From: Cyanophora paradoxa CCMP329
Taxonomy: Eukaryota; Plantae; Glaucophyta
Assembly (NCBI GenBank): GCA_004431415.1
Contig: QPMI01000572.1
Span: 248,001-312,000 of the forward strand
DNA: 64,000 bases
Reading direction: 5' to 3'
The notes under the pieces are model-generated. The model made no database searches, was not told the origin of the DNA, and worked only from the letters and a program-made list of their open reading frames with translations. This document shows, in pieces, positions 9,735 to 26,100 of the stretch (positions are counted from its first letter, which is position 1; each line of letters starts with the position of its first letter). A program made the position numbers and the translations under genes.

Positions 9735-12700
9735 ATGGATCCGGAGCTCGAGCTGGGGATCGAGGGCCAATCAATGGCTACTCGAAATCGGCCAGGCAAT
9801 GCTTCGCCCAGTCCGGTTGAGATGGAGCTCGACGAGTCAGCTAATGCTGCACGATCAGCATTCTCGAGTGCTAGCCCCGTTGACACCACGTCACCCATGG
9901 CCATCGAGTCTGGCTCGCTGCTTTCACAGCCGATCAGCAGCGCGGCTCCAGCTATGGATCCAGATCTAGATCTAGATCACCTCGTCGTCGATCTCTGCAT
10001 GGATCCGGACGGCACAGACAGCAATAATCGAAGCTGGATTGATTTCAAAGAAGAGCTCGAAAAGCGCGGAGTACAGCTTCGTCCTCTAAATCTGTAAGCA
10101 CCGCGAGCGCGCCGCGCTGTCTATAGATCTTTTCGTCTTCGAACTCTTCTCATGACAAATGCAGGCCTGACAATGATCAGGAGGGCCAGGTACAGCAGGC
10201 GGGACCTTCTGATGCCGGCGCACCACTCGTCTTTCTCGCATCTGCTCGGTCGGTACAAAAAGAAGATCTTGTGGAAATTCTATTGTCAAGTTCGTGCCAT
10301 GCTTCACGCCTTATCCATCGGCGCCCCGCCCAGCGGCGGTCCTGAACTGTAGTTTTGTCGGCGCAGAGGTCTACCGCGCCTCAGTGTTTGTCGTTCTGCT
10401 CGACACGTTCGAGCAGGTGTTCAACAGCGGCCTTCGCATGTGCCTCGGTGGCATTAATGTACGCATGCTCAGCGGCTCATGCTCATGATTATTGCAAATA
10501 TGAGCTCATTATCACTCACACAGGTCGAGAAGCTCTTTCTTTTCGGAAACCCCCGCGATCCCGGATACGGCGGTCGAATCGATGCTTTCAAGAAGGCGCT
10601 CGAGCGCATCAAACGTCCTTCATACCGGGAGCCCCATGCCGAGCTCACGCTGGCGCCATCAAGGGTTGGCAGGCCGAGGCCGCCTCCGGACTCGGGCGGT
10701 CAAACGTCCAGCCGCAGCTGGCCGATTGAAGATCCGACTGCGATTCGAGTGTTCGTCAGCTACTCGCGGTCGAACAAGTCCGCAGTACAGAGTATTCTCA
10801 ATGAACTGAAAACGCTTACTCGAGATCGAAACATTCATTTCTGGTGCGCATGCTACGTATACACCGCAAAGAGCACGTCTACGAAATATATAATTATAAC
10901 GCAAGCGCGCACACTGCAGGGTGGATTTTGAGCAGCTGTGGGCCGGTACGTCCTCTATGCAGGCCAGCGCCCCCTCCACGCGAGCTCCGTCTAACAAATA
11001 CATCCACTCTGCAAGGTGTGCGCTGGGTGGATGAAAGTGAGCACTTTGTATTGGATACTGCCTTTCTCGCGTTCAGCTCTTTTATTTCGGTACATGTTCG
11101 CTCATGGATTCCATGCGTAGTTGCAAGGGGTATTGAAGGAAGCACGCACTTTCTATTCTTTGCGTCACAATGCTCTGTAGAATCACAGTTCTGCAGAGGT
11201 GCGCAATTTGCTTATAGCGTATACGTCCTTAATTGGAACGGTAATTATAACGTCGCCTGCGCAGAGGAAATCGATTATGCCTACGTTCAGAAAAAGCGCA
11301 TCCTCATTTGTTATCTGGAGGAACGCTCTATTATAATGAGCTGCCTGAGCTCTCAATCGGCCGTGGGCTTGCGGATGCGCTGGCCATGGCCTTGCGAACA
11401 AAGGGAGAGTCAAGCGAGCGCAGCCGAAGTTATCTCTCGACTGCTGGGCCATGCGCATGTATCTGGCCAGCTTCCCGCTGCAGTGCGTGTTTCGTTGTAT
11501 ACGTGACGATGGCTTTAAAATTACCTGAGCCGCCCTGGATGTTATTGTGTTTTCCAATCGATCTGGCAGAGCGCAATCTGCGTAAACTGTGCAGTGGAGA
11601 GAAGGCCCAAGTGTGAAGCTCGGGGTGATGTCGCCTCCCAATGCGACAGCTGCGCAGATGCCGTTCTCATCCGCGGCGACCTTCATTTGTTCAATGAGCT
11701 CTTCGGTCCAGACGCAAGGGCCGACGAAACTCAACAGCATCTCATCATGCAGAACCGCGAGGTGTGCACGTTTCTCATATTATGACGGAAGACCATGCAT
11801 ATGATGACTAATGTAATACTAATCCTACTACTCGGTTGCAGTACTTGCCGTATGACATATGTCGGCGACATGTGAATGGATCCGGAGCGATATTCAATGT
11901 TCGACGCGTGCTGCCTCCGACGTCGACGTCGACCGACCGCGACATGACAACACCTGCGCTCGAGTTGGAGGTCTTTGAGCGGCACCCGTGCAGCGGTGAT
12001 GCCTCGTGGAGGGCGGCGCAGCGGGCCCTCGCCCATGCGGCGTGGTTTCGCTGCTACGGCGTCCCGACACTATGGGACTCTTGCGCTGCGCGCAAAGCGA
12101 TCGTGAAAACCCGTATATGCGGCCAAACGTCAGTTTTGGTTTTATAATTAATTCTTTCTTTCGGCCTATGATAAAATAATGACAATCTTCCACGGCCAGT
12201 GTTGAGCAGGACCTCAAAAGAGGCGGTGAATACGAAGTAGAACATGTGATCGATTTCTTGGAGCAGGTGCACGCTTTGGAATTCCAATTTATATCGCGCA
12301 ATGCAATGTTACAAAACAAGGTTTTGCAGATGTCCTTGATTTTTCACCACATTCACACATACGCCAAGCTCGCTCACCAGCGCATTTCAACTTCTGCTGT
12401 CCTTGTATCTGGTCGCTATCGTGATCACGGCATTCCTACGTTCGTTCCTGAATTTCTATTGCTTGTCATAGCCATCAGTCATTCTGCGGTCAGATTTATG
12501 CTCGAAGACCTTGGACTTGCCAGACGACTCCGAAGCACGCCGCCGCCAATTTTCGATAGCGATAATGATCGTGACGTGCGTCTGTGCACTCGCCTCGGAC
12601 GGTCGGACCTCATGACGACTGACCTCTGCTCTTGCAGGCCGCTCCGGATCCATTGAGTGCTCAGCATGAAGACATCGCAGGCATCGGAATCGTGGCTTTG

Positions 12701-15700
12701 TCGATGCTGTCAGGGTCTTTTCCCCGGCCCGCTGAAAAGAATGAAAAATGCAGCTGCAATCTGATAAGGATGATGTTTCCGCAGGGAATCCATTGGAAGA
12801 AACGACGCTCATTCTGCGTTCAGGGCGTTACAACCGACATTGATGCATGAGAGCTCAATGCTTAAAGTTTTAGACATAATTGCAAGAATTTTGGGGGTGC
12901 AAAACTCCCTCTGAAATGCTTAATTTCATACCGATCCTGCCTCCGTGTCGCACAGATTAGCACCGCGTCGTCACCCACTATAATTATCAAATCAGCTGTG
13001 GAGCTGTGGTCGTCCCTTCAGAAAGCCCAACTCCTTCGGCCTGAAAGAGGTGTCGTTCGAGCTTTATGATTATCAAGCTCGAGGTTCAAGCTTACGAAAT
13101 AGCAGACTTCGCGGCTTCCGAGAGCCCAGCAGTTCGAGCATCTGTATGGGGTCTACGAGCGAAAATGAGGGCCGCAAGCGCAGCCATTCATTGTGAATCT
13201 AGCAGCTCTAATACTGATGTGCGCCAAGAGGTAAGTAGCAATTTGCAACGTCAAATGTTTCATGATTACGTACACATGTACATACTCACCTTAAGCTTGG
13301 CTTCGAATTCACGGTCGATTAATCACCTGTGACTCTTCTTCCAATTGCGTAGATCGTGGACGTCTCCGTGAAACTAAGGGGCTCACCTTCTCTCGTCGAC
13401 CCTTTCGGCGTTCTAGAAGTGATGTTAGGTTTGGCAACGGCATCTCTACTGGTCCGGCAGGCCCTGAGGCCTTTGACGCCACGTCCGCCAATTTAAGCTC
13501 ACAGAGGGAGCCCCAGGCGCAGCACCAGTCGACGCCTGGATCGATTTTGCTCCTGCAGCTGATTCAAAGCCTCACAATCTCCAGTTTATCCCGGGTACGT
13601 ATACTTTCTTGGGCGTCAAATTCAAGTTATTGAATACATGTTTGATTACAGACAATTCAACGAATCTCGTCGGGTTGCGTCGCCATCGATCTCAAAATCC
13701 CCTCCTGGGTCGTTGCGGGGCTCAGACTTCTAGATCTGGACGCCAAGGAAGCCCTCAAACAGTGCGGCGTTCAAACCCTGTCGACGGCGTCGGAGCCGAT
13801 CCTGGAGATTCAAGGATCTGCAGATGAATTCGAAGGTCTGATCATCATTTGAGGGCACCCTCACACATGTACACAATCTGCAGCTTACTTCGTCATCAGA
13901 GGCAGTTCCAGCTGCAGATCTCAAGAACGGGTTCTGTCCGATAACTTGGGGCTCAAATGCATTCGTCTTGAGCGGATTTCAAGACAAAGATGGTTTCCCG
14001 GAGCTGCAAATGTCTTCTGTGGTTGAGCCCGACAGCGATGCCATTGCTGATCATGAGGCGAGGGCAACTCCTATAGTGGAGCTCGAGTGCTGCATGAGCA
14101 TTAACGAATTGATTACAAGCCAGGGGTCGGCTGCAGCCATAGCTGCAGCCGAGGTCATATTTACGGCGCTAGCCGCGGAGGAGACATGTTTCGCTGGAGC
14201 ATCGAAACCAGATTCTAATTCGTTTATTCACGGCAGCTCGCTTGCATGCGCAATGGCCACGACCCTCGCCCCAGCGGCAGTCACGTCGTGGACTGAACCA
14301 GCGTCTGCACGTGTCCAGAAGCGACCACGCACACCAACCGCAGACTCGGCAAACTCTGGAAATGGAGAGCAGCCAAAGGCCAAGCAGCCGCGCCGCGAGC
14401 TGCGCATTTTTATCTCTTCTACATTTCGTGCGCCCTTTAACTATTACTGTTACTCAGTGACTCTTGTCCCTGATGTTCGGTCCTTTGTCCGGGTCATGTA
14501 TGCGCAGAGGACATGGCGGAAGAGCGCGACGAGATCCGCTCCGTGGTATATCCGAGGCTGCGCGCCCTATGCGCCGAGCGCGGCCTCTTCCTTCACATCA
14601 GCGACCTCCGGTGCGCTGGCCACGGCCATGCTAGCGCTACAGGTCGATATCCTGCTGTTTAGATCTTTCACCGTTTGAAGTTGCAGTCCTATATATGTCC
14701 AGTCCTGATTTATCTGGCTACTTCTGGCTCATTAAATCTGCTCATCGCTGCATGTCCACGCAGTTGGGGCATTCGCGACGAGGAGGTTGCGAACGGCGAG
14801 GTGCGGCTTGCAACCGGGCTTTTAGAAGAATCAAACGTTCCGGAATTTCTTTCGATTGCAACACTTTGATCGCGACAGGTCATACGTCTCTGCCTCCGGG
14901 AGGTGCAGCGGAGCTCATATTTCGTTGGATTGATCAAAGGTACGTTAACACCCTTTGACGTTAACACCCATCCCGACTCAAACGTTAACGGTTGCGCAGG
15001 GCGATACGGCTGGCACGTGAACCCAGCGGCCTCCATGGTAGACGACGCTGATGTACTCTACAAAAGGTGCATACACAAAATTTCCGCATTCGCAGTCATA
15101 ATATCTGAATAGGAAGGAATAGGAATTCTAGCCATAAGTACTAGTGTGAACAGGAAGGAAATTCGTGCAGGAATCTGCGGGTAGCCGCCAAGGAGTTTCC
15201 CTGGGTGGAGGCTTGGCACGACCGCTCAATTACCGAGCTCGGTGTGGTTTCTGTTATTGGTTTACTCTGATCATGATTCGCACTGGAGGATTGTGCTTCG
15301 TGCAGCTGCACGCCTCAATTATAATGACATTCATTTCCGCAGAGATCCGTGCAGGGGCCCTTCGCAATCTGCCGGTGCCATCGATTGCATTTAAATTTCT
15401 CTAGCTCTCAGCCTGATTCGAATTCTTTTCCAGGCTGCACGAGACAAGAGTTTGTTTTACCTCGCAGAGGAGGAGACGCGAGGCGCAGCCGAAGGATCTC
15501 ACGCAGCGATGCGTCTGGAAGAGCTGCAGAGTGAAATTCGAAGCTCCGGCCTTCCTGTAGCACGCTTCAAGGGTGCAGAGCAGCTCGCGTTGACCTTGCG
15601 CGATTCCCTTGCCGAGGTCCGCTTCTGCTTCTGCACACAACACAGCAGCTCAGCGCTATAGCTAGCTGACACAACAGCTACCATAATGTTTGTTTGGCTT

Positions 15701-18700
15701 AATTTGAATCTTTGGTGCGCAGATGATTGAACGCGACTACCCCCTTGGTCAGCAACAGACGTGGCTGGAGAAGGAGCGGGCTGCGCAGGCGGCGTTTGCA
15801 GCGGCGCGACAGAGGACATTCGTCGGCGACCCGCACGATGCAACTGCCCTCGATGCCTACGCTAAAGCGGACGGGCCGGAAATCTTCGTGCTGCACGGGG
15901 CTGGCGGGTGCGGGAAAAGCGGTGCGCATGCGCTATGCTATTGGGTTTAAATTATATTCTCCTCGAGCTCACGAGCGGCGATCAGCTGTGCTCGCGAACT
16001 GGTCGGCGCAGTGGAGTGGCAAGCATCCTGAAGATCTCACGATCGCCCACTTCATTGGAGGATCGCAGAGCAGCTCCTTCCTCTCTTCCGTCGCCCGGTG
16101 AGAACACGTGCCGGGCGGCAGCTAGCGCTGGAGATATATACATTGCTACTAATACGAATTCGAAGGCGCCTCAGCGAAGAGGTCAAGCAGAAATGGCCAC
16201 AAGAAGATGGCTTCAAATGGCACGGAAGCGATGCCGAAGTGGCGGATCAGCTCAAGGCTTGGCTTGTCAAGGGTGCACCATGGTTGCCAGGGCGACTGGT
16301 GCTGGTTATCGACGCGCTCGACCAGCTGCGGGGCGGCCCCGCCGCCCGTTCGCTCAGCTGGCTCCGGACCGCTGCGAGCCCCAGGCTTCGGATCATCGTT
16401 TCAAGTGCCCCTGGTGCGGTTCCTGCCGCGTCCTGCGAGCTATCTTTTAGTGACCTCTCCTAATTATGATCATGAGCAGGCTTTGCCCTTAGCAGAGCGC
16501 TCGCGTTGCCCCACACACAACAGCGAGAGCTAGGAGCTCTTACTGAAGACAGACGGCGTGAGATCTTGCGGCGCATTTTGCAGGAGCAGGGTCGAACGCT
16601 CAGTGAGAGGCATGTCAATCGCATTGTTGCTGCGCCCGCCTGTGCAAATGCGTAAGTTCTTCATTTCACGATTCAGCCGTAGCTCACTTCGTCTGAATTT
16701 CATTCTGATCATGATCAGACTGCACCTGCGAACGCTGCTGGAGGAGCTATCAGCAGTGGCTGTGCACTCGACATTAGACACTGTCCTTTCTTCTTGCCTC
16801 GCTTGCCAAGGGCCGCGGGACCTCTTTCGCCTTGTCCTCCGCCGCCTGGTGCAACAGCACAATTACAGCGCCAAGGAAGGAGGCGAGAGATCCGTGGCGC
16901 CGGCATTGTTCGCCGGCGCGGTCGTCTGCTCGCGCCATGGTATGGCGGAAAGCGAGCTGTCCGAGTTCCTCGAAGTTGGCGAACACGGGTCGCTGACGCA
17001 GGTGCGTGCAGTATGATCAGGATTTTTAAAAAGATCCAGATCTAGAGCTATCTATATGTGGTTTTCGAAATTATATGCTCGGATGGTCCAATGCTCGGAA
17101 ATTATATGTAATTATAATGACGGCTTCTTTTATAGGTCCAATGGAGCCTGTTGTGGTACGGCATGCTTCCTATGCTTGTTGACCGAGGTAATGCACTCTT
17201 CGCGCCCAATGCGTTCTAACTATATTTTGATCTGCACTGAGAGTAGCTAATTCGGTTCAGATGGTCTATTCGGGTTCTTTCACCGCTGTGCTGCTGAGGC
17301 GAGTCAACGTTCGCGGGCAGTTCCCTGCATTTGTAACCCTGACTCTCGACCAGGCAGCCGAACTTGAATTCGGATTGTCGAAAGAGGGGTCGGATCCGGA
17401 AGGTCTGCTGGAAGAGGCCGCGTGCATCGAGCGCCGACGGATGCTGCATGCTCGGCTTGGCGAGTTCTTCATCGCGAGAGAGCCGACACAGCGTCGCGCG
17501 GATGAGGCGCCGTGGGCGCTTGCGCAGGCGGGAGCCGAGCACGGAAACAGCCTCGCAAAACTTCTCTGCGACGCGGACCTAGTGCAACGGCTGGACGAGT
17601 ACGAGCTCGCGTCGCTCTGGCTCAAGAGCGGGAAATCGCAGGAGGCGGCTGCGCGTTATGCGGAGCGCCTGGGCCTCTACACCGCGAGCACCGTCCACCA
17701 CGCTGTCGGCCTCGAGCGCGCCGCTGAAGTGCTTCAAGCGATGGGTCGATCAAAAGAAGGGTTTAGATTTCTGAAGGTATGTGCGCATGTTAACGTTATA
17801 ATTAGTGAGCAGGCTTTTAATTTAGCTCTAGCACAAGTACGTCTAGATCTTAAATATTGAAATTAATCCGTCGCTTCTTCAAGTCCATCGCGATCGCCTT
17901 GCCTTATAAATCGTTTTACGTGTAAAGCGGTCCCTGGAGATCAAGGAGGAGGCCTGCGGTTCCGAGCATCCAGACACGGCAAAGACGCTCCGCAGTCTGG
18001 CAGATATACATCACGAGATGGGCGAGTATGCCAAAGCGCTGCCGCTGTACGAGGTGCGGTGTTATGTAATTAATTAATTGATTAATTATAATGCATACGC
18101 ATTCGTACTCTGGCCATTCAACAACGGCCAGCGTACTCTGGCCATTCAAGAAAATTCGAGTGCATGCGGTCCGGAACATCCTGAAACTGCGAAGACGGTC
18201 CATAATCTGGCGAATCTGTACGACAGTATGAGAAACGACTCAGAGGCTCAGAAGCTCTACCGAGTGCGTTCAGATCTCGTAATATAACGGTGCAACAACG
18301 ACGGCGTGATATATCGATGTCGCAGCGGGCCTTGGTGATTCAGGAGAAGGCATGCGGTCCCGAGCATCCAGACACGGCGAAGACACTGCAAGGCTTGGCA
18401 TTTCAGTACAGGGAAGCAGGCAAGTACGCAGAGGCACTGCCGTTGTTCGAGGTGCGTTGAATTTTGATTTGCAAGCTATCTTGGCCTTCTAATGCAAAAT
18501 CAGGATTCTTTGGCGATTGTGGAGAAATTATTTGGCCTCGAGCATCCCAAAACAGCGACTGCTCTGCAAGGTCTGGCAGGGCTATTCCGGGAGATGGGCG
18601 AGCACTCCAAGGCGCTGCCATTGTACGAGGTGCATAATGATTGGAATTACGGGCTGATTTTACAGGCGGGTCGGGGTGGCTGGCTAACATGCGGGCTGGT

Positions 18701-21700
18701 CATGGTTTTCTAGCGATCCCGTGCAATCTCGGAGAAAGCTTGTGGACTGGAGCACCCTGCCACAGCGGCGATTCTGCTGAGCCTGGCAAGACTCTACGAG
18801 GACATGCAAAACGACGAGATGGCTGTGCTGCTTTACACGGTGCATCCAATCGATGTTAATCATAAGCTCGAGGGCTCTTCGGAACGAAATCTGATTCTGA
18901 AACACGCATCCTGCATTAACATTGTGCAAAATGCGCAGCGCTCTCTTGAGATTTTTGAAAAAACGTACGGCCCCGAACATCCTGAAACCGAGGCGACTCT
19001 GCACGGCCTTGCAAGAACGTACGAAACGATGGGCGATTACTTGGAAGCGCTACCGCTTTTCAAGGTAGCTACAGCATTTATCATGCGGGTGGCCCATTGA
19101 GTATTGGGAGGCCATTGCGGGGCCGCCGCGAAGGCTGATTGCATATGCATGTACAGCGGAGCCTCGCGCTCAAGGAAAAGGCGTGCGGACCCGAGCACCC
19201 AAGCACGGCGAAAATGCTGCGCCGCCTCGCAGATCTGTACGCCGAATTGAGCGATCACGACAAAGCAATCTCTCTTTATCAAGTGCGGTGACGATTATAT
19301 AACAGATGATCATGAATAATCATTATTAGAAGGACCATCTGCGATGCGTATGCTGATATATATATATATCCACTGCAGCGGTCCGTCGAGATCACCAACA
19401 ATGCGTGCGGACCCGAGCACCCAGACACCGCAGAATCGCTGCACGGCCTAGCGGGGCTGTACCGAGACATGGGCGACTATGCTAAGGCACTTCCTCTGTA
19501 CGAGGTGTGCGGCTCCCGTGCACGCAGTTGCTGAGTTGTTGTTGACATTTTTACTTTGGTTGCCGGCCAGCTAATTCTAATCATTATCATACATTTAAAT
19601 TCCGGGTGTGCATGAAATTCCGGGCCGGGGCTGATAGGAAGCGGGACGGCGCCGCGCAGCAAGAGCTTGATATCCACAAGAAAGGACCCCTCTGCGAGGA
19701 TCAAGATTACAACATAGCTGGGACGCTACAAAGCCTGGCGAAGGTGCACCAGGGGATGTCAGAGTACGCCAAGGCGTTGCCATTGTTCCAGGTCCGCAAT
19801 TGCAATCGTGAAATCGAATTCGAACGCGATCTAAATATACATATGTCCCTATATCTACGATTTTATCATCAGATCTTGCCGATTTCAAACGCTAGCTGTG
19901 GGTAATATAAGTGTGTGTATATAGTATGATTTTAGACTTTTTATTTTCAGTCAGAGCAGCTGGTTTCTAAAACAATCTAGAGTTGACCAGATGATGGTGA
20001 TGGTGTTGACAACACGCAGCGGAGCCTCGCGCTCAAGAATCAGGCGTGTGGTCCCGAGGACCCAAGCACGGCGCGGACTATGCACGGCCTCGCCGATCTG
20101 TACGTCGATATGGGCGAGTACGCCGAGGCGCTTCCACTGTACGAGGTGCACGACCTCAAGATTCCTCGGGGGGGGGGGGGGGGGGGGGGGGGAAGGGGGA
20201 GGGGGGTACCGGTCCTTCTAAGAGTTCTGTACAGTGCGTGCACATCCACTGGTCCATCACCCGTCTAGATCTTGCGGCTGCAGCTGCGGGCTGCACCGAC
20301 GTCCTTTAAACTCTTGAGCTCTTAAGCTTAAGCTGTTTTAGTGATGCATAGGGCAGGCGGTATTTGTAAGCTGCTGCTTTTTCAAACCTCTATCGACGCA
20401 GCACTCTCTGAAGATCTGTGAGGAGGCTTGCGGCGCGGAAGACGATGACACGGCTGCGACACTGTACGGTCTGGCGGAGCTCTACCGGGAGACGGGCGAA
20501 TTCGCGAAGGCGCTGCCGCTGCACCAGGTGAGTCTTTTGTGCAGTACATGAAAAATCAATGGAGTACTATTTCTGACAGTGAAATGCATCGGGGCTTGCG
20601 TTGCAGCGGTCGCTCGCTATCTCGGAGAAGTCCAAGGCGTGCGGACCCGAACACCCTAACACGGCGGTAAGTTTGGAAGGGATGGCAAGGTTGTACCGCG
20701 AGACAGGTGATTTTGCAAAGGCGCTGCCACTACTGGAGGTGCGCGACTTAATATATGTACTAGTATTGCAGATTGAATGAACTGACCGGAGGCTGACCGC
20801 GATTCTGCACAGAGGTCCCTCGAGATCACGGAGAAGACGTATGGTCCCGAGAGCCCCGGCATGGCTTCGACGTTCCACGATATGGCCGTCTTGTACCACG
20901 TGATGGGTGAAGATACGAAGGCGTCGCCATTGTACGAGGTGCGCAGCGTGCGGGTCTCGCGGCGAAAGTTGCATGTAGCAGATAAGGACATGCAGCGCGA
21001 GCTATCGCTGATCATGATCATGACCGTCGGACGGGGGCATGCGTGCGGCGCATCTGACTAATTAATCTGACTACGTAGAATTGCTCTCGCGCAATCTAGA
21101 AGAGCAAAAGCGGTATACTGATTTAGAGCTGCTTTAATCTGATTATTTTAGCTCGACCAAATGTTATTGGACGTGCCAAAATCTGATCATAATCAGAGCT
21201 AAAATAATCAGATTAATTATATAAAGCAGCTCGCCCTGGCCATGGACGTGCTAGCGCTGATCATGATCATAACCGTCGACGGGGGCATGCGGCGCAGAGA
21301 TCTCTCGAGATCAGAGAGAAAGCGTGTGGCATCGATCACCCGGACACCGCGGAAACTCTCCTCTGGAAGGGGCGCCTGCTGTCGGATCGCGGGGACCTTG
21401 CTGGAGCACGCCCAATCCTGGAGGTGCGACGACCGCGATATCAGAGGATATTGCACACAGGATTCACCTAATTACAATATAACTGCAACGCAGCGGTCGC
21501 TGAGGATCCTGCGGGAGAAGCTCGGGGGCCGGCACCCGCGGGTCGCGCGGGGGGCGACGTCCCTCGCGGAGCTGCTGGCGCGGGCGGGCGAGCACGCCGA
21601 GGCCCAGCGGCTCCTCGAGGCGAGCGCCCGCCCCCGCTAAGCTTAGCTTCTAAGCTAAGGCGCCCTGCCTGCAGGAGGCGATGGGGATCTGGGAGGCCGC

Positions 21701-21985
21701 GCGGGCGGCGTTCGCGGTGGGCCGCGTGCACCCCGACGCGGCGGAGACGCTGCACGCGATGGGCACCCTTGCTGCCGCGCGGGGCCGCCCGCACGAGGCC
21801 CGCGCCCACTTCGAGGTGCGGCTTGCACTTGGCCCGGATTCGGGTATACGTATCGAAGGCAATTAATGTACATTGACGGGCCGTCGGCGCCGGGACCGCA
21901 GGGGGCGCTGGCGATGCTGCGGGAGCGGCTCGGGGAGGGGCACCCCAAGGCGCTCCGCACCGCCGCCGCCGTCGCCGCCCTCTGA
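9735..21985 (+). CDS. NLR-like STAND protein: TIR - unknown region - DUF4062 - NACHT (NPHP3/TEP1-like) - TPR array; may be one gene or two adjacent genes
   Basis: Same-strand exons from ATG 9735 to TGA 21985, with the domains listed separately below. Exon 13652-14427 links the upstream region to DUF4062 if a single extra T near 13850 is discounted. Exons between ~11.6 and 13.6 kb were not fully resolved. Confidence 0.6.
10742..11330 (+). other. TIR domain (TIR_2-like), 5 exons
   Basis: Spliced: IRVFVSYSRSNKSAVQSILNELKTLTRDRNIHFW|VDFEQLWA|GVRWVDE|IARGIEGSTHFLFFASQCSVESQFCR|EEIDYAYVQKKRILICYLEE. Matches F(I/V)SYS...W.D...G..W...I..GI..S...S.(W/F)C..E(L/I)..A. Confidence 0.88.
14395..15070 (+). 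other. DUF4062 domain
   Basis: Spliced: RELRIFISSTF|DMAEERDEIRSVVYPRLRALCAERGLFLHISDLR|WGIRDEEVANGE|VIRLCLREVQRSSYFVGLIK|GRYGW. This is the FISSTF.DM..ER...DLRWG...CL.EV...F.G..G.RYG signature seen N-terminal to NACHT in TEP1/NWD/NPHP3-like proteins. Confidence 0.88.
15723..17001 (+). other. NACHT/STAND P-loop NTPase domain
   Basis: RTFVG; Walker A VLHGAGGCGKS (~15888-15920); AVLANW; IAHFIG; Walker B LVLVIDALDQL (~16296-16328); RIIVS; CAN|LHLRTLLEEL; SRHGMAESEL. Confidence 0.88.
17928..21985 (+). repeat. Array of 16 complete TPR (42-aa, kinesin-light-chain/TPR_10-like) repeats plus a terminal partial repeat, one repeat per exon
   Basis: Exons: 17928-18053, 18132-18263, 18326-18451, 18504-18629, 18714-18839, 18939-19064, 19157-19282, 19379-19504, 19660-19791, 20020-20145, 20402-20527, 20607-20738, 20813-20938, 21298-21423, 21494-21619, 21675-21815, 21902-21985. 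Consensus RSL.I.EKACGPEHP.TA.TL..LA.LY..MG.Y.KALPLYE. Confidence 0.95.
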
Positions 21986-23159
21986 AACAAGTGCACGCGC
22001 GCCTCATCGAATATCGAAGAGAGCCCGCGGTCGAAGAAATGTTAACGTTGTTAGAAATCAGCGGGCATGTGTTGCAAGAATAATTCAGGGTTTATATATT
22101 TACATCCAGCAGACGCTGTCTCCTCTTGTGAGCTCCTGCAGCTGTCGTAGAGTGTTTTGTCTGCTGTGGAAATTCGTTCAAATTCCATTATCCTTTCACA
22201 TCGTCTCATGCAGTGTATACCGTTACACTTGAAACGTTCTGGGCTCAACTTTGAAACTGGCAAGATCTAGAGCGTCGTGTCACAACTTGAGTGCAGTACT
22301 AGTATACGTAAAGCTCGCGATTTGTATGTGTACATGTACATGTAATTATAAACGCATTTGCGCAATTTCCAATTGCGCCCCGTGGGCCCAGCGGCCGTGC
22401 CGGCGTGGCATGCGCACGTGCCACGCGGATATATCGGACGTCGGCGTATGCCGCGGTACGCGTCGGCGGATATATCAGCTGATTCGGATCTAGACTCTAG
22501 ATCTGCAGCTGAGAGTCCAGTAGATCTAGATCTAATCTAAAGTCGCCCGCGGCCGCCGGCTCGCCGCCGACTAGTACAGTGACTACTACATGTACAGTCA
22601 CTGAGCCTCGACTCTCTCGAGCTCGGATCCGGAGTAGTATACGTAGTACCGGACCGTCGGACCGGGAGTCACCGGACCGGCGCAGCACTGGTACCGGTAA
22701 TCGCCGCCGAGTCAGCGCCGACTAGTACTCCGACTCTAGTCTCCGAGGCGCCCTGCCGCCGGCTCGCCGGAGTCGCCGGCCGAGGCGACTCGCCGCCCGG
22801 CGGGCCGGCGGCGGCGCGGCCCTCCGCGGCCGGACGATTAACCGTGTGTTGAACGTTCAACGGCCGGTTGCCAAAGTTGGTGGTACCGTAGTACCGGTTG
22901 GCCCAGTGGGGTTCGGTCCGGCCGCCGGCCGCCCGGGCAGGCGGTGCCAGGCGCGCCCCGCGCGCGCGCCCGCGGCCGGCCGGCCGCGCGCGGGCCGCCC
23001 GGGCGCCGCCGGAGTGCACGTGGGCGGCCGGACCCGGCCGGCGGCCGCGGGAGCGCCGGGCCGGGGGATCCGGCCGGGACCGGCCCATCATCCGGGCCCG
23101 GGGAGCTTCCCGAAGCTAAGCCAATTAATATTGCAAGGCCCAATTTTGGCCAAGGCAGC

Positions 23160-26100
23160 AAGCCGGCCCAACGACCCCATCAACTTCGACATCATCTTCC
23201 CGTGGAAGGAGGACCTGCAGCGCGCTGCGCAGGTTCGCTTTTGCAATTCGTACTCTCGATGGCCTCATGGCCTTTTCCGGCCTCATGGCCCGCCCCTCGC
23301 AATCGATCCGATCTCCTCTCTTTCTCTCTTGCATGACTTTCTCGATCTTGCAGGCCGCTGCTGCGTCCACCTCGGGATCGGCGTGAGGCGTTCGGGCCCC
23401 CCATCGATTCCCGCTGCGTTTCGCGGCGGGGTCGATCCCTCGGCCCTCCCCTCGCCCCCGGCCCTCGTTTTCTCTTCCGGCTCTTGGGCTTTGTCCCTCG
23501 AGCTGTACCACCCCCCGTAAATGACGTTTAGGTTTCTTTCTCTGAACGTAGCAGGCAAACTAGATCGAGCTTTTCATGATGTATTAGGCAAATCTTATCG
23601 TTCTTTTCTCTTTGATTGCCTCCGCGATAGCGCGCGGCATTCAGCTGTGTTCCTGCAGGAGACTCATGTTTCTTCTTCCTCATTATCCAAGCGCCTCGCG
23701 CGCGCCTGGGGATCGGCCCCTCTTTTTGGTCTCATAACCCTAGTGGTCAGGCCACTCAGGGGGTTGCCGCTCTCTTTCCTGGTGATTCCCTTTTCAAATT
23801 CGGTTGTTGACTCCAGCTGATAGTCCTCGACTTCAACTTTTCTTGTTCGAGACCAAATTTGGTCCCATTTATTTTTGCAATGTATATGCTCCTACAGATG
23901 ATTCTGAGCGTCGCGGTTTCTATGAAACTCTTCTTTATACTCTCGAGTCCGTGGTTCCTTTCGACAGCCGCCTCATCTTAGGAGGAGATTTTAATTTCCA
24001 CGAGCTCCCCTCTGATGCTCCCGGCCCTAGTCGTGGAACCCCTCCCCCGACGCCTTTGAGTTGATCCGAGCTCGTTATGGCCTTTTCGATGCCGGGCCTC
24101 ACACTAGAGCGTGCTTTAAAACCTGGAGCCGGCCGCGGCCGGCGGGCGGGACGATTGAGTCCCGGCTCGATTATTTTTTCCTCTCGTCCTCCCTCCGCGA
24201 TTGGGCCGTCTCGCTTCGGCCGTGGACGGCTTACTCTGCAGTTGGCGAGCCACGCAATTCTGATCATATAGGCATCTATCTCACACTTAAAGCCCCGGAA
24301 TCTCTCGCCGTGGCCCCGGTCGCTGGCGCATGAACTGGGCGGCGTATGGGACATGCCCGGAATATTCTGGTTTCATTTCTACTATAATTCGTGACTGGCG
24401 CGCCGCGTGGCCATTAGTTACAGATCGCGTCCGTCGGTGGGACGCCCTCAAATCCGAGCTCCAGCGTCGTGTTCGGGCCTGGGAGCTTGATGAGAAGCGC
24501 AGGCGGAAGGACGCTTACATCTCCGCTGTTCGAGCTCTCGAGGCTCTCATCCGTCGCCACGCCGCTGGCTCTATTGATGATGTCGCTTTCCGTACACTGC
24601 GCACTTCTATGATGCGCAGCTTGAATTCGCTTGTGTCTGACTATGCCAGACAGCATTCACGCAAAGAAATTCGTTTCGCCGCAACTCAAGATGGACGGTC
24701 TAGTAAAGCTTTTTTTGAGCATTATTTACCGGATTCTCATGCTCAGTTCCCGGAGGGGCTTCGGGCCCTCGACACCGAAGGCCCAGAGGCCGCGTCGGAC
24801 GACCCCCGCACTTTGCTCGAGCTTTCTTCCGCCTATTACGCTCAACTATATGACGGCGCTGCAGCTCAGGCCGCGGTTGATCGGTCGCTAGCTGAGCGGT
24901 CTGGCGTTGCCTCTCTCTATTCCCCTCACCGCCTGCTCCCTACTGAGTCTGCTGATCTTGACTCTGACTTATCGTCTGGAGAACTATTTCGTGCTTTTAA
25001 GGAGATGTCTGGCGGAGCCAAGTCTCCTGGCATCGATGGTCTCCCTGCTGAATTCTACGTTCACTTTTTTGATGAGATTGGCCCCGATTTCTGTGCTTAC
25101 ATCGCTGCTATGTATGAGTCTGGGCAGCCGTCCGAGTCTTTGCGGCACGTCCTCATTACTCCTATTACTAAACCGGCAACGGACCCTACTTTGATTGCAA
25201 ATCGCCGCCCAATTTCTCTCTCTAATGTCGAAGAGCGTGCAGTCGAGCGCGCCCTCTCCAACCGCTTAACGCCACTCATGTCTGGTCTTGTATCCCGCTT
25301 TCAGTCTGGCTTTATTCATCGTCGGTCCGCAGTGCACCAGGTTATGCTTGTTTATCTTCTCATGCATTACGAGGGCGGTAATCCTGCACTTGAACAGCTG
25401 TGCTTCGGATTTCTTGATTTTTCAAAAGCCTATGACCGCGTTAACTGGAGCTTCCTTTTCTGGTCGCTCGAACAGTTCGGTTTCGGGTCCCAATTTATCA
25501 AGTGGGTCCGCCTGCTCTACTCTGATCTGCAGGGTTCTGTTCACATTAACGGCTGGACCTCCGCCCCTTTCCCCATTCGATGCGGTGTACGTCAGGGTGG
25601 CCCCTTTCGCCCTATCTATATAATTTGTGCACACACCTTTTAGCCCTTTTGATTAATGCTGATGCTCGTATACGAGGTGTCCGCTTGTCCTCTAGCTCTC
25701 TTTGCAAGGTGCTCCAGTTTGCAGACGACACGGTTCCTTTAATCTCGTCTTTTACCGAATTGCCTTTCTGGAAAGAGTGCTTTGATAAATACTGCCGGCT
25801 CTCTGGAGCTCTTATTAATCTCGAGAAATCTAGCCTTCTTCCACTCCGCGATATCCCGCACATGCCTGGCCTAGCGTCGAGGACTGCCCCTGGCGGCGTC
25901 TTCAGGTGACGGATCTCCCTCCCGCTGAAAAAATTCGAAAATACCTGGGCTTTCCACTAGAGCCCGATCTGTCTCGGTTCTGGCGGAAAAAGACCGCTGC
26001 TCTTGATATCCGTGTCCAGCAAGCGAAGACTTATCGCATGCCGATGCGTTCCGGCGTTCTCCTTGCCTGGGCTGTATTTATTGGGTCCCTACATTATGCT

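What the first reader, a model, noticed from the sequence alone, without database searches (positions are those of the whole stretch)
17928..21985. NLR sensor domain built from one-repeat-per-exon, phase-0 TPR cassettes with a hypervariable binding face
Seen: all 16 complete TPR exons start and end at the same repeat position and are flanked by phase-0 introns. Twelve are exactly 126 nt, three are 132 nt and one is 141 nt, so any exon can be skipped, duplicated or swapped without frameshift. Scaffold residues (SL.I, GPEHP.TA, LA, ALPL) are conserved. The positions that are N-N in the usual SLNNLA of this TPR class differ in nearly every unit (RS, HN, QG, QG, LS, HG, RR, HG, QS, HG, YG, EG, HD, LW, TS, HA), as do neighbouring residues. 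Exons 7 and 10 share an identical first 18 nt (cggagcctcgcgctcaag) and then diverge, hinting at conversion or mosaicism. Known: exon-per-repeat shuffling is described for brown-algal ROCO-LRR and NB-ARC-TPR genes, and repeat shuffling changes specificity in fungal NLRs. Inference: this is a diversifying non-self receptor in a unicellular alga/protist, varied by alternative splicing and/or exon shuffling.
Basis: partly seen in the sequence, partly recalled or inferred. Interest (0 to 1): 0.9.

Follow-up and report, generated by a model that had tools for sequence, protein, structure and literature searches.

The report
Old repeat-per-exon TPR sensor, Cyanophora
This is a real, spliced gene of an alga (very probably Cyanophora paradoxa) for an immune-receptor-like protein whose sensor has one repeat period per in-frame exon, a design already known from brown algae; here it looks like an old, mostly fixed array with one clear past recombination event rather than an active diversity generator.

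Summary
The anatomy is confirmed: 16 TPR exons (12×126, 3×132, 1×141 nt) plus a terminal exon, with 17 consecutive phase-0 introns at one repeat position. Upstream lie TIR, DUF4062 and NPHP3-type NACHT regions. Low-depth RNA contigs join exons 12-13-14 and 14-15 in order; exons 1-11 are uncovered, so skipping is neither seen nor excluded.

The variable positions are the generic TPR groove positions. They evolve about three times faster than the scaffold (omega 0.5-0.8 versus 0.16-0.28) but never significantly above 1. Repeats are only 37-74% identical, introns are unrelated, no spare or inverted exons exist, a 2024 DNA sample is identical, and most exons have no close copy among the contigs listed.

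The 126-nt exon design is published for Ectocarpus NB-ARC-TPR genes, and this scan has already noted it on several other loci of this genome. What differs is the lineage and the TIR/DUF4062-NACHT scaffold. Function is untested.

The parts
10731..11329 (+). TIR domain spread over several small exons; predicted splicing gives C-x-x-E-I with the usual catalytic Glu
   Evidence: Pfam TIR_2 E=0.05 on a piece with in-frame introns; Atlas nearest clusters all TIR_2, best 0.89, lead only; sequence. No RNA laid here.
12199..12888 (+). Possible degenerate kinase-like region (HQR and DLG where HRD and DFG would be); by eye only
   Evidence: Sequence; no support from Pfam, Atlas or PDB
14400..15066 (+). 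DUF4062 (TIR-like NADase family) over five exons, with FISSTF, DLRWG, CLREV and GRYG motifs
   Evidence: Pfam DUF4062 E=0.026 on one 21-aa exon; junction reconstruction
15723..15921 (+). Exon ending in Walker A (GAGGCGKS) of the NACHT/STAND NTPase
   Evidence: only weak Pfam NTPase matches, E 0.1-0.3
16166..16414 (+). Exon with Walker B (LVIDALDQ)
   Evidence: Pfam NPHP3_N E=0.012, NACHT E=0.13
16720..17001 (+). NPHP3-type helical domain exon
   Evidence: Pfam NPHP3_hel E=1.5e-5; 55% identical paralogue P0002 in EukProt
17354..17776 (+). Long exon before the array, ending in a degenerate TPR; its donor is in the array register
   Evidence: Pfam TPR_NPHP3 E=0.012; junction
17928..18053 (+). TPR exon 1, 126 nt
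   Evidence: TPR_12 above cut-off
18132..18263 (+). TPR exon 2, 132 nt
18326..18451 (+). TPR exon 3, 126 nt
18504..18629 (+). TPR exon 4, 126 nt
18714..18839 (+). TPR exon 5, 126 nt
18939..19064 (+). TPR exon 6, 126 nt
19157..19282 (+). TPR exon 7, 126 nt; first ~90 nt share recent ancestry with exon 10, last 36 nt do not
19379..19504 (+). TPR exon 8, 126 nt
   Evidence: TPR_12 above cut-off
19660..19791 (+). TPR exon 9, 132 nt, degenerate first half
20020..20145 (+). TPR exon 10, 126 nt; 81% like exon 7 over nt 1-90, 86% like exons 1 and 4 over nt 91-126
20402..20527 (+). TPR exon 11, 126 nt
20607..20738 (+). TPR exon 12, 132 nt; spliced to exon 13 in RNA
   Evidence: X20 record 9
20813..20938 (+). 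TPR exon 13, 126 nt; whole exon in an RNA contig
21298..21423 (+).
   Evidence: X20 records 9, 10
21494..21619 (+). TPR exon 15, 126 nt, GC donor, GC3 1.0
21675..21815 (+). TPR exon 16, 141 nt, GC3 0.96
21902..21985 (+). Terminal exon: partial repeat (capping helix) and stop codon
   Evidence: a paralogue has an intron at the same place

Best explanation
A functional, weakly expressed NLR-like STAND gene whose TPR sensor grew long ago by tandem duplication of one symmetric (phase 0-0) exon carrying one 42-residue period. Shown: the layout, intact frames, purifying selection, correct splicing of exons 12-15, and one old intragenic exchange or partial duplication linking exons 7 and 10. Inferred: the introns let unequal crossover or conversion add, drop or patch repeats without frameshift, so the family diversifies slowly in the germ line. 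This copy is now largely fixed and probably makes mainly one all-exon mRNA. Also inferred, by analogy with NLRs and TEP1: ligand binding in the TPR groove releases the NACHT switch, oligomerisation follows, and the TIR and/or DUF4062 domain cleaves NAD+.
For: 17 in-register phase-0 introns versus mixed phases upstream. Overall omega 0.20-0.34, far below 1, with no stop or frameshift. Exons 37-74% identical, introns without detectable homology, no hidden exons on either strand. RNA junctions in genomic order, 0 mismatches. 2024 DNA run identical over the array; no listed copy at 80% or more for most exons. Exon 7/10 breakpoint near nt 90, family-wise P=0.002 by permutation and 0 of 800 no-recombination simulations. 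In Podospora, length polymorphism was perfectly correlated with high internal conservation (PMC13449251), which this array lacks.
Against: RNA covers only 3 junctions at depth 2.5-3.2 and contigs drop rare isoforms. The DNA run may be the same strain as the assembly. The youngest pair (7/10, codons 1-30) has groove omega 2-2.6, not significant. The GC-rich exons 15-17 may have come from a paralogue. No biochemical or phenotypic data.
Confidence: 0.62

Rival explanations
1. [quoted passage not shown]
For: Layout permits it. Significant 7/10 mosaic. Groove omega three times the scaffold; M7-M8 LRT 3-9 with a small class at omega 1.05-1.6. Many similar loci in the genome according to earlier notes.
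Against: No skipped junction, no reservoir or inverted exons, no near-identical exon pair, no DNA difference, M1a-M2a LRT 0, groove omega not above 1. PHI test not significant.
Confidence: 0.2
2. A non-immune scaffold or signalling protein of the NPHP3/TEP1 type (ciliary or vault-like role). The exon periodicity is a relic of how the array grew, and groove variation only reflects different repeats touching different parts of one fixed partner.
For: Best Pfam matches are NPHP3 domains. Human NPHP3, TEP1, NWD1 and NWD2 have DUF4062 next to NACHT (bioRxiv 10.64898/2026.05.01.722283). Groove variability is generic to TPRs.
Against: An extra TIR domain with a catalytic-looking Glu; a lineage-expanded, divergent family (paralogue only 55% identical); loss of the backbone-binding Asn that kinesin light chain keeps in five of six repeats.
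Confidence: 0.13
3. A decaying gene drifting under relaxed selection.
For: Low GC over the gene (about 0.52 versus 0.65-0.8 in much of the window), very low RNA, several degenerate repeats (2, 5, 9), a nearby degenerate retroelement.
Against: Omega about 0.2-0.3 across deep divergence, all exons and splice sites intact, spliced RNA present.
Confidence: 0.05

Closest known systems
Ectocarpus NB-ARC-TPR genes (Zambounis et al., PMC3341825; Teng et al. 2023 Plant J, cited in PMC13449251, not readable here)
   Same: TPR sensor built from 126-nt, 42-residue phase-0 exons behind a STAND NTPase; candidate immune receptor.
   Different: Here a DUF4062-NACHT (NPHP3-type) NTPase with an extra TIR, in a glaucophyte. 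No inactivated exons in introns and no significant positive selection, both reported for Ectocarpus. Whether the intron sits at the same repeat position was not tested.
Fungal NLRs with high-internal-conservation repeats (Podospora HNWD and NB-ARC-TPR; PMC13449251; structures 4Y6W, 4Y6C)
   Same: 42-residue TPR-like repeat class, effector-NTPase-repeat order, repeat exchange as a source of novelty.
   Different: Repeats there are near-identical (80-100% in the HNWD WD40s; threshold Psim 0.70) and length-polymorphic; here 44% mean pairwise amino-acid identity, about 0.62-0.66 to consensus, and split by introns.
NPHP3/TEP1/NWD DUF4062-NACHT proteins (bioRxiv 10.64898/2026.05.01.722283)
   Same: DUF4062 adjacent to NACHT, NPHP3-type helical domain, TPR tail as in NPHP3.
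   Different: Additional upstream TIR and a 3-kb unexplained region; one period per exon; part of an expanded family.
Kinesin light chain TPR domain (PDB 3NF1 and others)
   Same: Same 42-residue period and HP linker; best solved-structure match, E=2.5e-47.
   Different: KLC mostly keeps Asn at TPR position 6; here it is Gly or Ser in 11 of 16.

Membership tests
Brown-algal-type exon-shuffling NTPase-TPR receptor | One 126-nt phase-0 exon per 42-residue TPR period | tested here: met
   definition in PMC3341825
Brown-algal-type exon-shuffling NTPase-TPR receptor | NB-ARC NTPase | tested here: not met
   Better matches are NPHP3_N, NACHT and NPHP3_hel; NB-ARC only E=0.3 at the P-loop
Brown-algal-type exon-shuffling NTPase-TPR receptor | Inactivated spare TPR exons inside introns | tested here: not met
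   Protein and DNA profiles find only the 16 known exons, both strands
Brown-algal-type exon-shuffling NTPase-TPR receptor | Traces of intra- or intergenic recombination among exons | tested here: met
   One old event, exons 7/10; array-wide PHI not significant; intergenic exchange not testable
Brown-algal-type exon-shuffling NTPase-TPR receptor | Positive selection on repeat sites | tested here: inconclusive
   Groove omega 0.5-0.8; M2a no gain; M8 extra class 1.05-1.6; youngest pair 2-2.6 but not significant
Brown-algal-type exon-shuffling NTPase-TPR receptor | Alternative splicing of repeat exons | tested here: inconclusive
   Three consecutive junctions only, depth about 3, contigs not reads
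Fungal HIC NLR | High internal conservation (Psim 0.70 or more) | tested here: not met
   Identity to consensus 0.62-0.66 by my own calculation, not T-REKS
Fungal HIC NLR | Repeat-number polymorphism among strains | tested here: inconclusive
   One 2024 DNA run identical, may be the same strain
NLR/STAND protein, NPHP3/TEP1 type | NACHT with Walker A and B, followed by helical domain | tested here: met
   Motifs present; NPHP3_hel E=1.5e-5, NPHP3_N E=0.012 on single exons, below curated cut-offs
NLR/STAND protein, NPHP3/TEP1 type | DUF4062 before NACHT | tested here: met
   E=0.026 on a 21-aa exon plus motifs over reconstructed junctions
NLR/STAND protein, NPHP3/TEP1 type | All domains in one transcript | not tested
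   The single read-laying run covered 16100-22050; no own-gene RNA contig lay 5' of exon 12
NLR/STAND protein, NPHP3/TEP1 type | Ligand-triggered oligomerisation and NADase activity | not testable with these tools
   Needs biochemistry

The most novel reading that the evidence does not exclude
A unicellular glaucophyte independently evolved a combinatorial immune repertoire, in which TIR/DUF4062-NACHT receptors vary their TPR groove by in-frame exon skipping or exchange, with selection on groove residues after each exchange.
Probability: 0.17. Interest if true: 0.75.

Novelty: new variant of a known kind. Interest (0 to 1): 0.3.

Why it matters
It shows the period-per-exon TPR sensor on a different NTPase and in a different lineage from the brown algae, which points to convergence; I found no paper on it in Cyanophora. 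A culturable unicell with such receptors would make the old question of whether algae diversify receptors by exon shuffling directly testable. This copy, however, gives evidence only for slow past remodelling, and the scan has already recorded the same design at several sister loci.

Tried and rejected
Hidden or inverted TPR exons: none. Intron homology as a sign of recent duplication: best local scores about 20 (roughly 10 matching bases), so none. The 18-nt run as proof of conversion: not significant alone; the synonymous-site and breakpoint tests are the real evidence. The top MaxChi triplet (exon 13 with parents 9 and 14) was rejected because exon 9 is degenerate in its first half and exon 14 in its second; I therefore repeated the test without them. 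Positive selection: not supported by M1a-M2a or by fixed-site tests. My codon models are home-made, used one tree despite mosaicism, and fixed relative branch lengths, so treat them as approximate. Similarity does not fall with distance along the array (rho -0.04). Kinase-like region: no tool support. Homologue searches with single exons gave little: nothing, one paralogue fragment with no contig on record, two generic TPR fragments. My errors: the single large HMMER job was submitted one base out of frame, so its result and hit P0001 are void; three Pfam queries were also out of frame and were redone.

Full report
Observation. Reading the region and enumerating AG...GT intervals gave 16 open exons between 17928 and 21815: twelve of 126 nt, three of 132 nt and one of 141 nt, then a terminal exon 21902-21985. 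All introns (52-359 nt) are phase 0 at the same repeat position. The donor of the preceding exon (17776) is in the same register, so there are 17 such introns in a row, whereas the upstream introns I reconstructed have mixed phases. This is not chance. Exon 15 ends at a GC donor. Pfam places TPR_1 positions 1-25 on exon residues 18-42, so each exon is one period offset from the structural repeat; dropping one still leaves whole repeats.

The gene. Upstream on the same strand lie a TIR region, an unexplained stretch with kinase-like motifs, DUF4062, Walker A and B exons and an NPHP3-type helical domain. DUF4062 is a TIR-like NADase family that sits next to NACHT in NPHP3, TEP1, NWD1 and NWD2 (bioRxiv 10.64898/2026.05.01.722283). 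The one good homologue found is a 55% identical EukProt protein with a 'tig..._g...' identifier, which from my own knowledge is the Cyanophora paradoxa gene naming; earlier scan notes name the same organism. The repeat class is that of kinesin light chain and the Podospora 42-residue repeats.

Expression and splicing. All strong holders of this stretch are DNA runs; one RNA-like run holds 5% of the words. Laid on 16100-22050, that run gave two contigs that fit wholly with no mismatch: one joins exon 12 to exon 13, the other exon 14 to exon 15. The first has 39 further bases; the depth in the exon 14 bin (1.7) equals 75 nt at 3.2 plus 39 nt at 2.5, so it most likely continues into exon 14. The gene is thus transcribed and spliced in order at these junctions. 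Depth is about 3, exons 1-11 are not covered and contigs lose rare forms, so skipping is untested for most of the array. The other two RNA runs showed only paralogue pieces.

Stability and copies. A 2024 DNA run matches the window without a difference over 16100-20159, 20214-21757 and 21791-22050; it may be the same strain. At 80% likeness, depth is flat over most of exons 2-10, with only short extra pieces near exons 1, 7, 8 and 11. Exons 15-17 have paralogues at roughly 85-92% identity. These three exons also differ in composition: GC3 0.96-1.0 in exons 15 and 16 against 0.50-0.81 in exons 1-14. They are either a conserved cap or an import from a GC-rich paralogue; I could not decide.

Age of the array. 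Exons are 37-74% identical in DNA and 44% on average in protein; identity to the consensus is 0.62-0.66. Introns show no homology and no spare exons hide in them on either strand. Ectocarpus NB-ARC-TPR genes have the same 126-nt exons but also inactivated exons in introns (PMC3341825). In Podospora, NLR repeat-number polymorphism was perfectly correlated with high internal conservation, threshold 0.70 (PMC13449251). By both yardsticks this array is of the old, quiet type.

Variable face. The most variable columns are 6, 16, 19, 22, 26, 29 and 30. Columns 19, 22, 26, 29 and 30 are TPR positions 2, 5, 9, 12 and 13, the positions most variable in all TPRs and lining the groove (PMC1261162). So the mapping to the groove is right but not special. 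Position 6, usually Asn, is Gly or Ser in 11 of 16 repeats: a shift more than a hypervariable site. With groove positions fixed in advance, omega is 0.50 against 0.16 elsewhere (LRT 37), and significantly below 1 under F3x4; under other codon frequencies it is 0.70-0.82 and not distinguishable from 1. M2a gives no gain over M1a. M8 adds a small class at 1.05-1.6. Synonymous sites are near saturation, so episodic selection could be hidden. Overall omega of 0.2-0.3 with no stop codon argues against a pseudogene.

Mosaicism. The 18-nt run is not significant alone, and PHI is not significant. But exons 7 and 10 share 17 of 20 synonymous codons in codons 1-28 (median over pairs 0.39) and 0 of 3 afterwards. 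Exon 10 is 81% like exon 7 over nt 1-90 and 86% like exons 1 and 4 over nt 91-126. The breakpoint statistic of 25.9 has family-wise P=0.002 by codon permutation after leaving out the two half-degenerate exons, and was not reached in 800 no-recombination simulations. It is old (19% divergence since). In the shared part, groove omega is 2-2.6 but not significant.

Verdict. A real NLR-like gene with a period-per-exon TPR sensor, built by ancient exon duplication and touched by at least one recombination, with no evidence here of ongoing combinatorial variation. It works like the brown-algal design in layout but is not a member of that family, having a different NTPase and no exon reservoir. Follow-ups of sister loci in this scan mostly reached a similar reading; those are unchecked notes and I had stated my reading before seeing them. 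Interest 0.3.

Noticed in passing
window:12199-12888: Between TIR and DUF4062, exons read like a degenerate kinase C-lobe (HQR, DLG, then a DIAGIGIV stretch). If real, the protein is TIR-pseudokinase-DUF4062-NACHT-TPR. Pfam, Atlas and PDB gave no support on the unspliced pieces.
   Followed up: partly
window:21494-21985: The last three exons form a GC-rich island (0.75) in a gene of about 0.52 GC and are the only array exons with 85-92% paralogues; possible exchange of the 3' cap between genes.
   Followed up: partly
window:20998-21285: Intron 13 holds a 39-nt direct repeat 249 nt apart enclosing a perfect 21-nt inverted repeat with a 41-nt spacer; looks like a small fold-back insertion.
   Followed up: no
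window:18104-18152: The first 21 nt of exon 2 are duplicated 28 nt upstream in intron 1 (95% identical), without an AG in front.
   Followed up: no
window:23900-27300: Downstream lies a broken non-LTR retrotransposon-like region (endonuclease-like fragments and a 437-aa reverse-transcriptase-like ORF at 24330-25643); identified by eye.
   Followed up: no
window:861-1460: Minus-strand ORF with a phytochrome-like N-terminal motif, by eye; fits a glaucophyte.
   Followed up: no
window:57098-58995: Tandem-repeat hits recur at a 1432-nt offset, i.e. a local tandem duplication.
   Followed up: no
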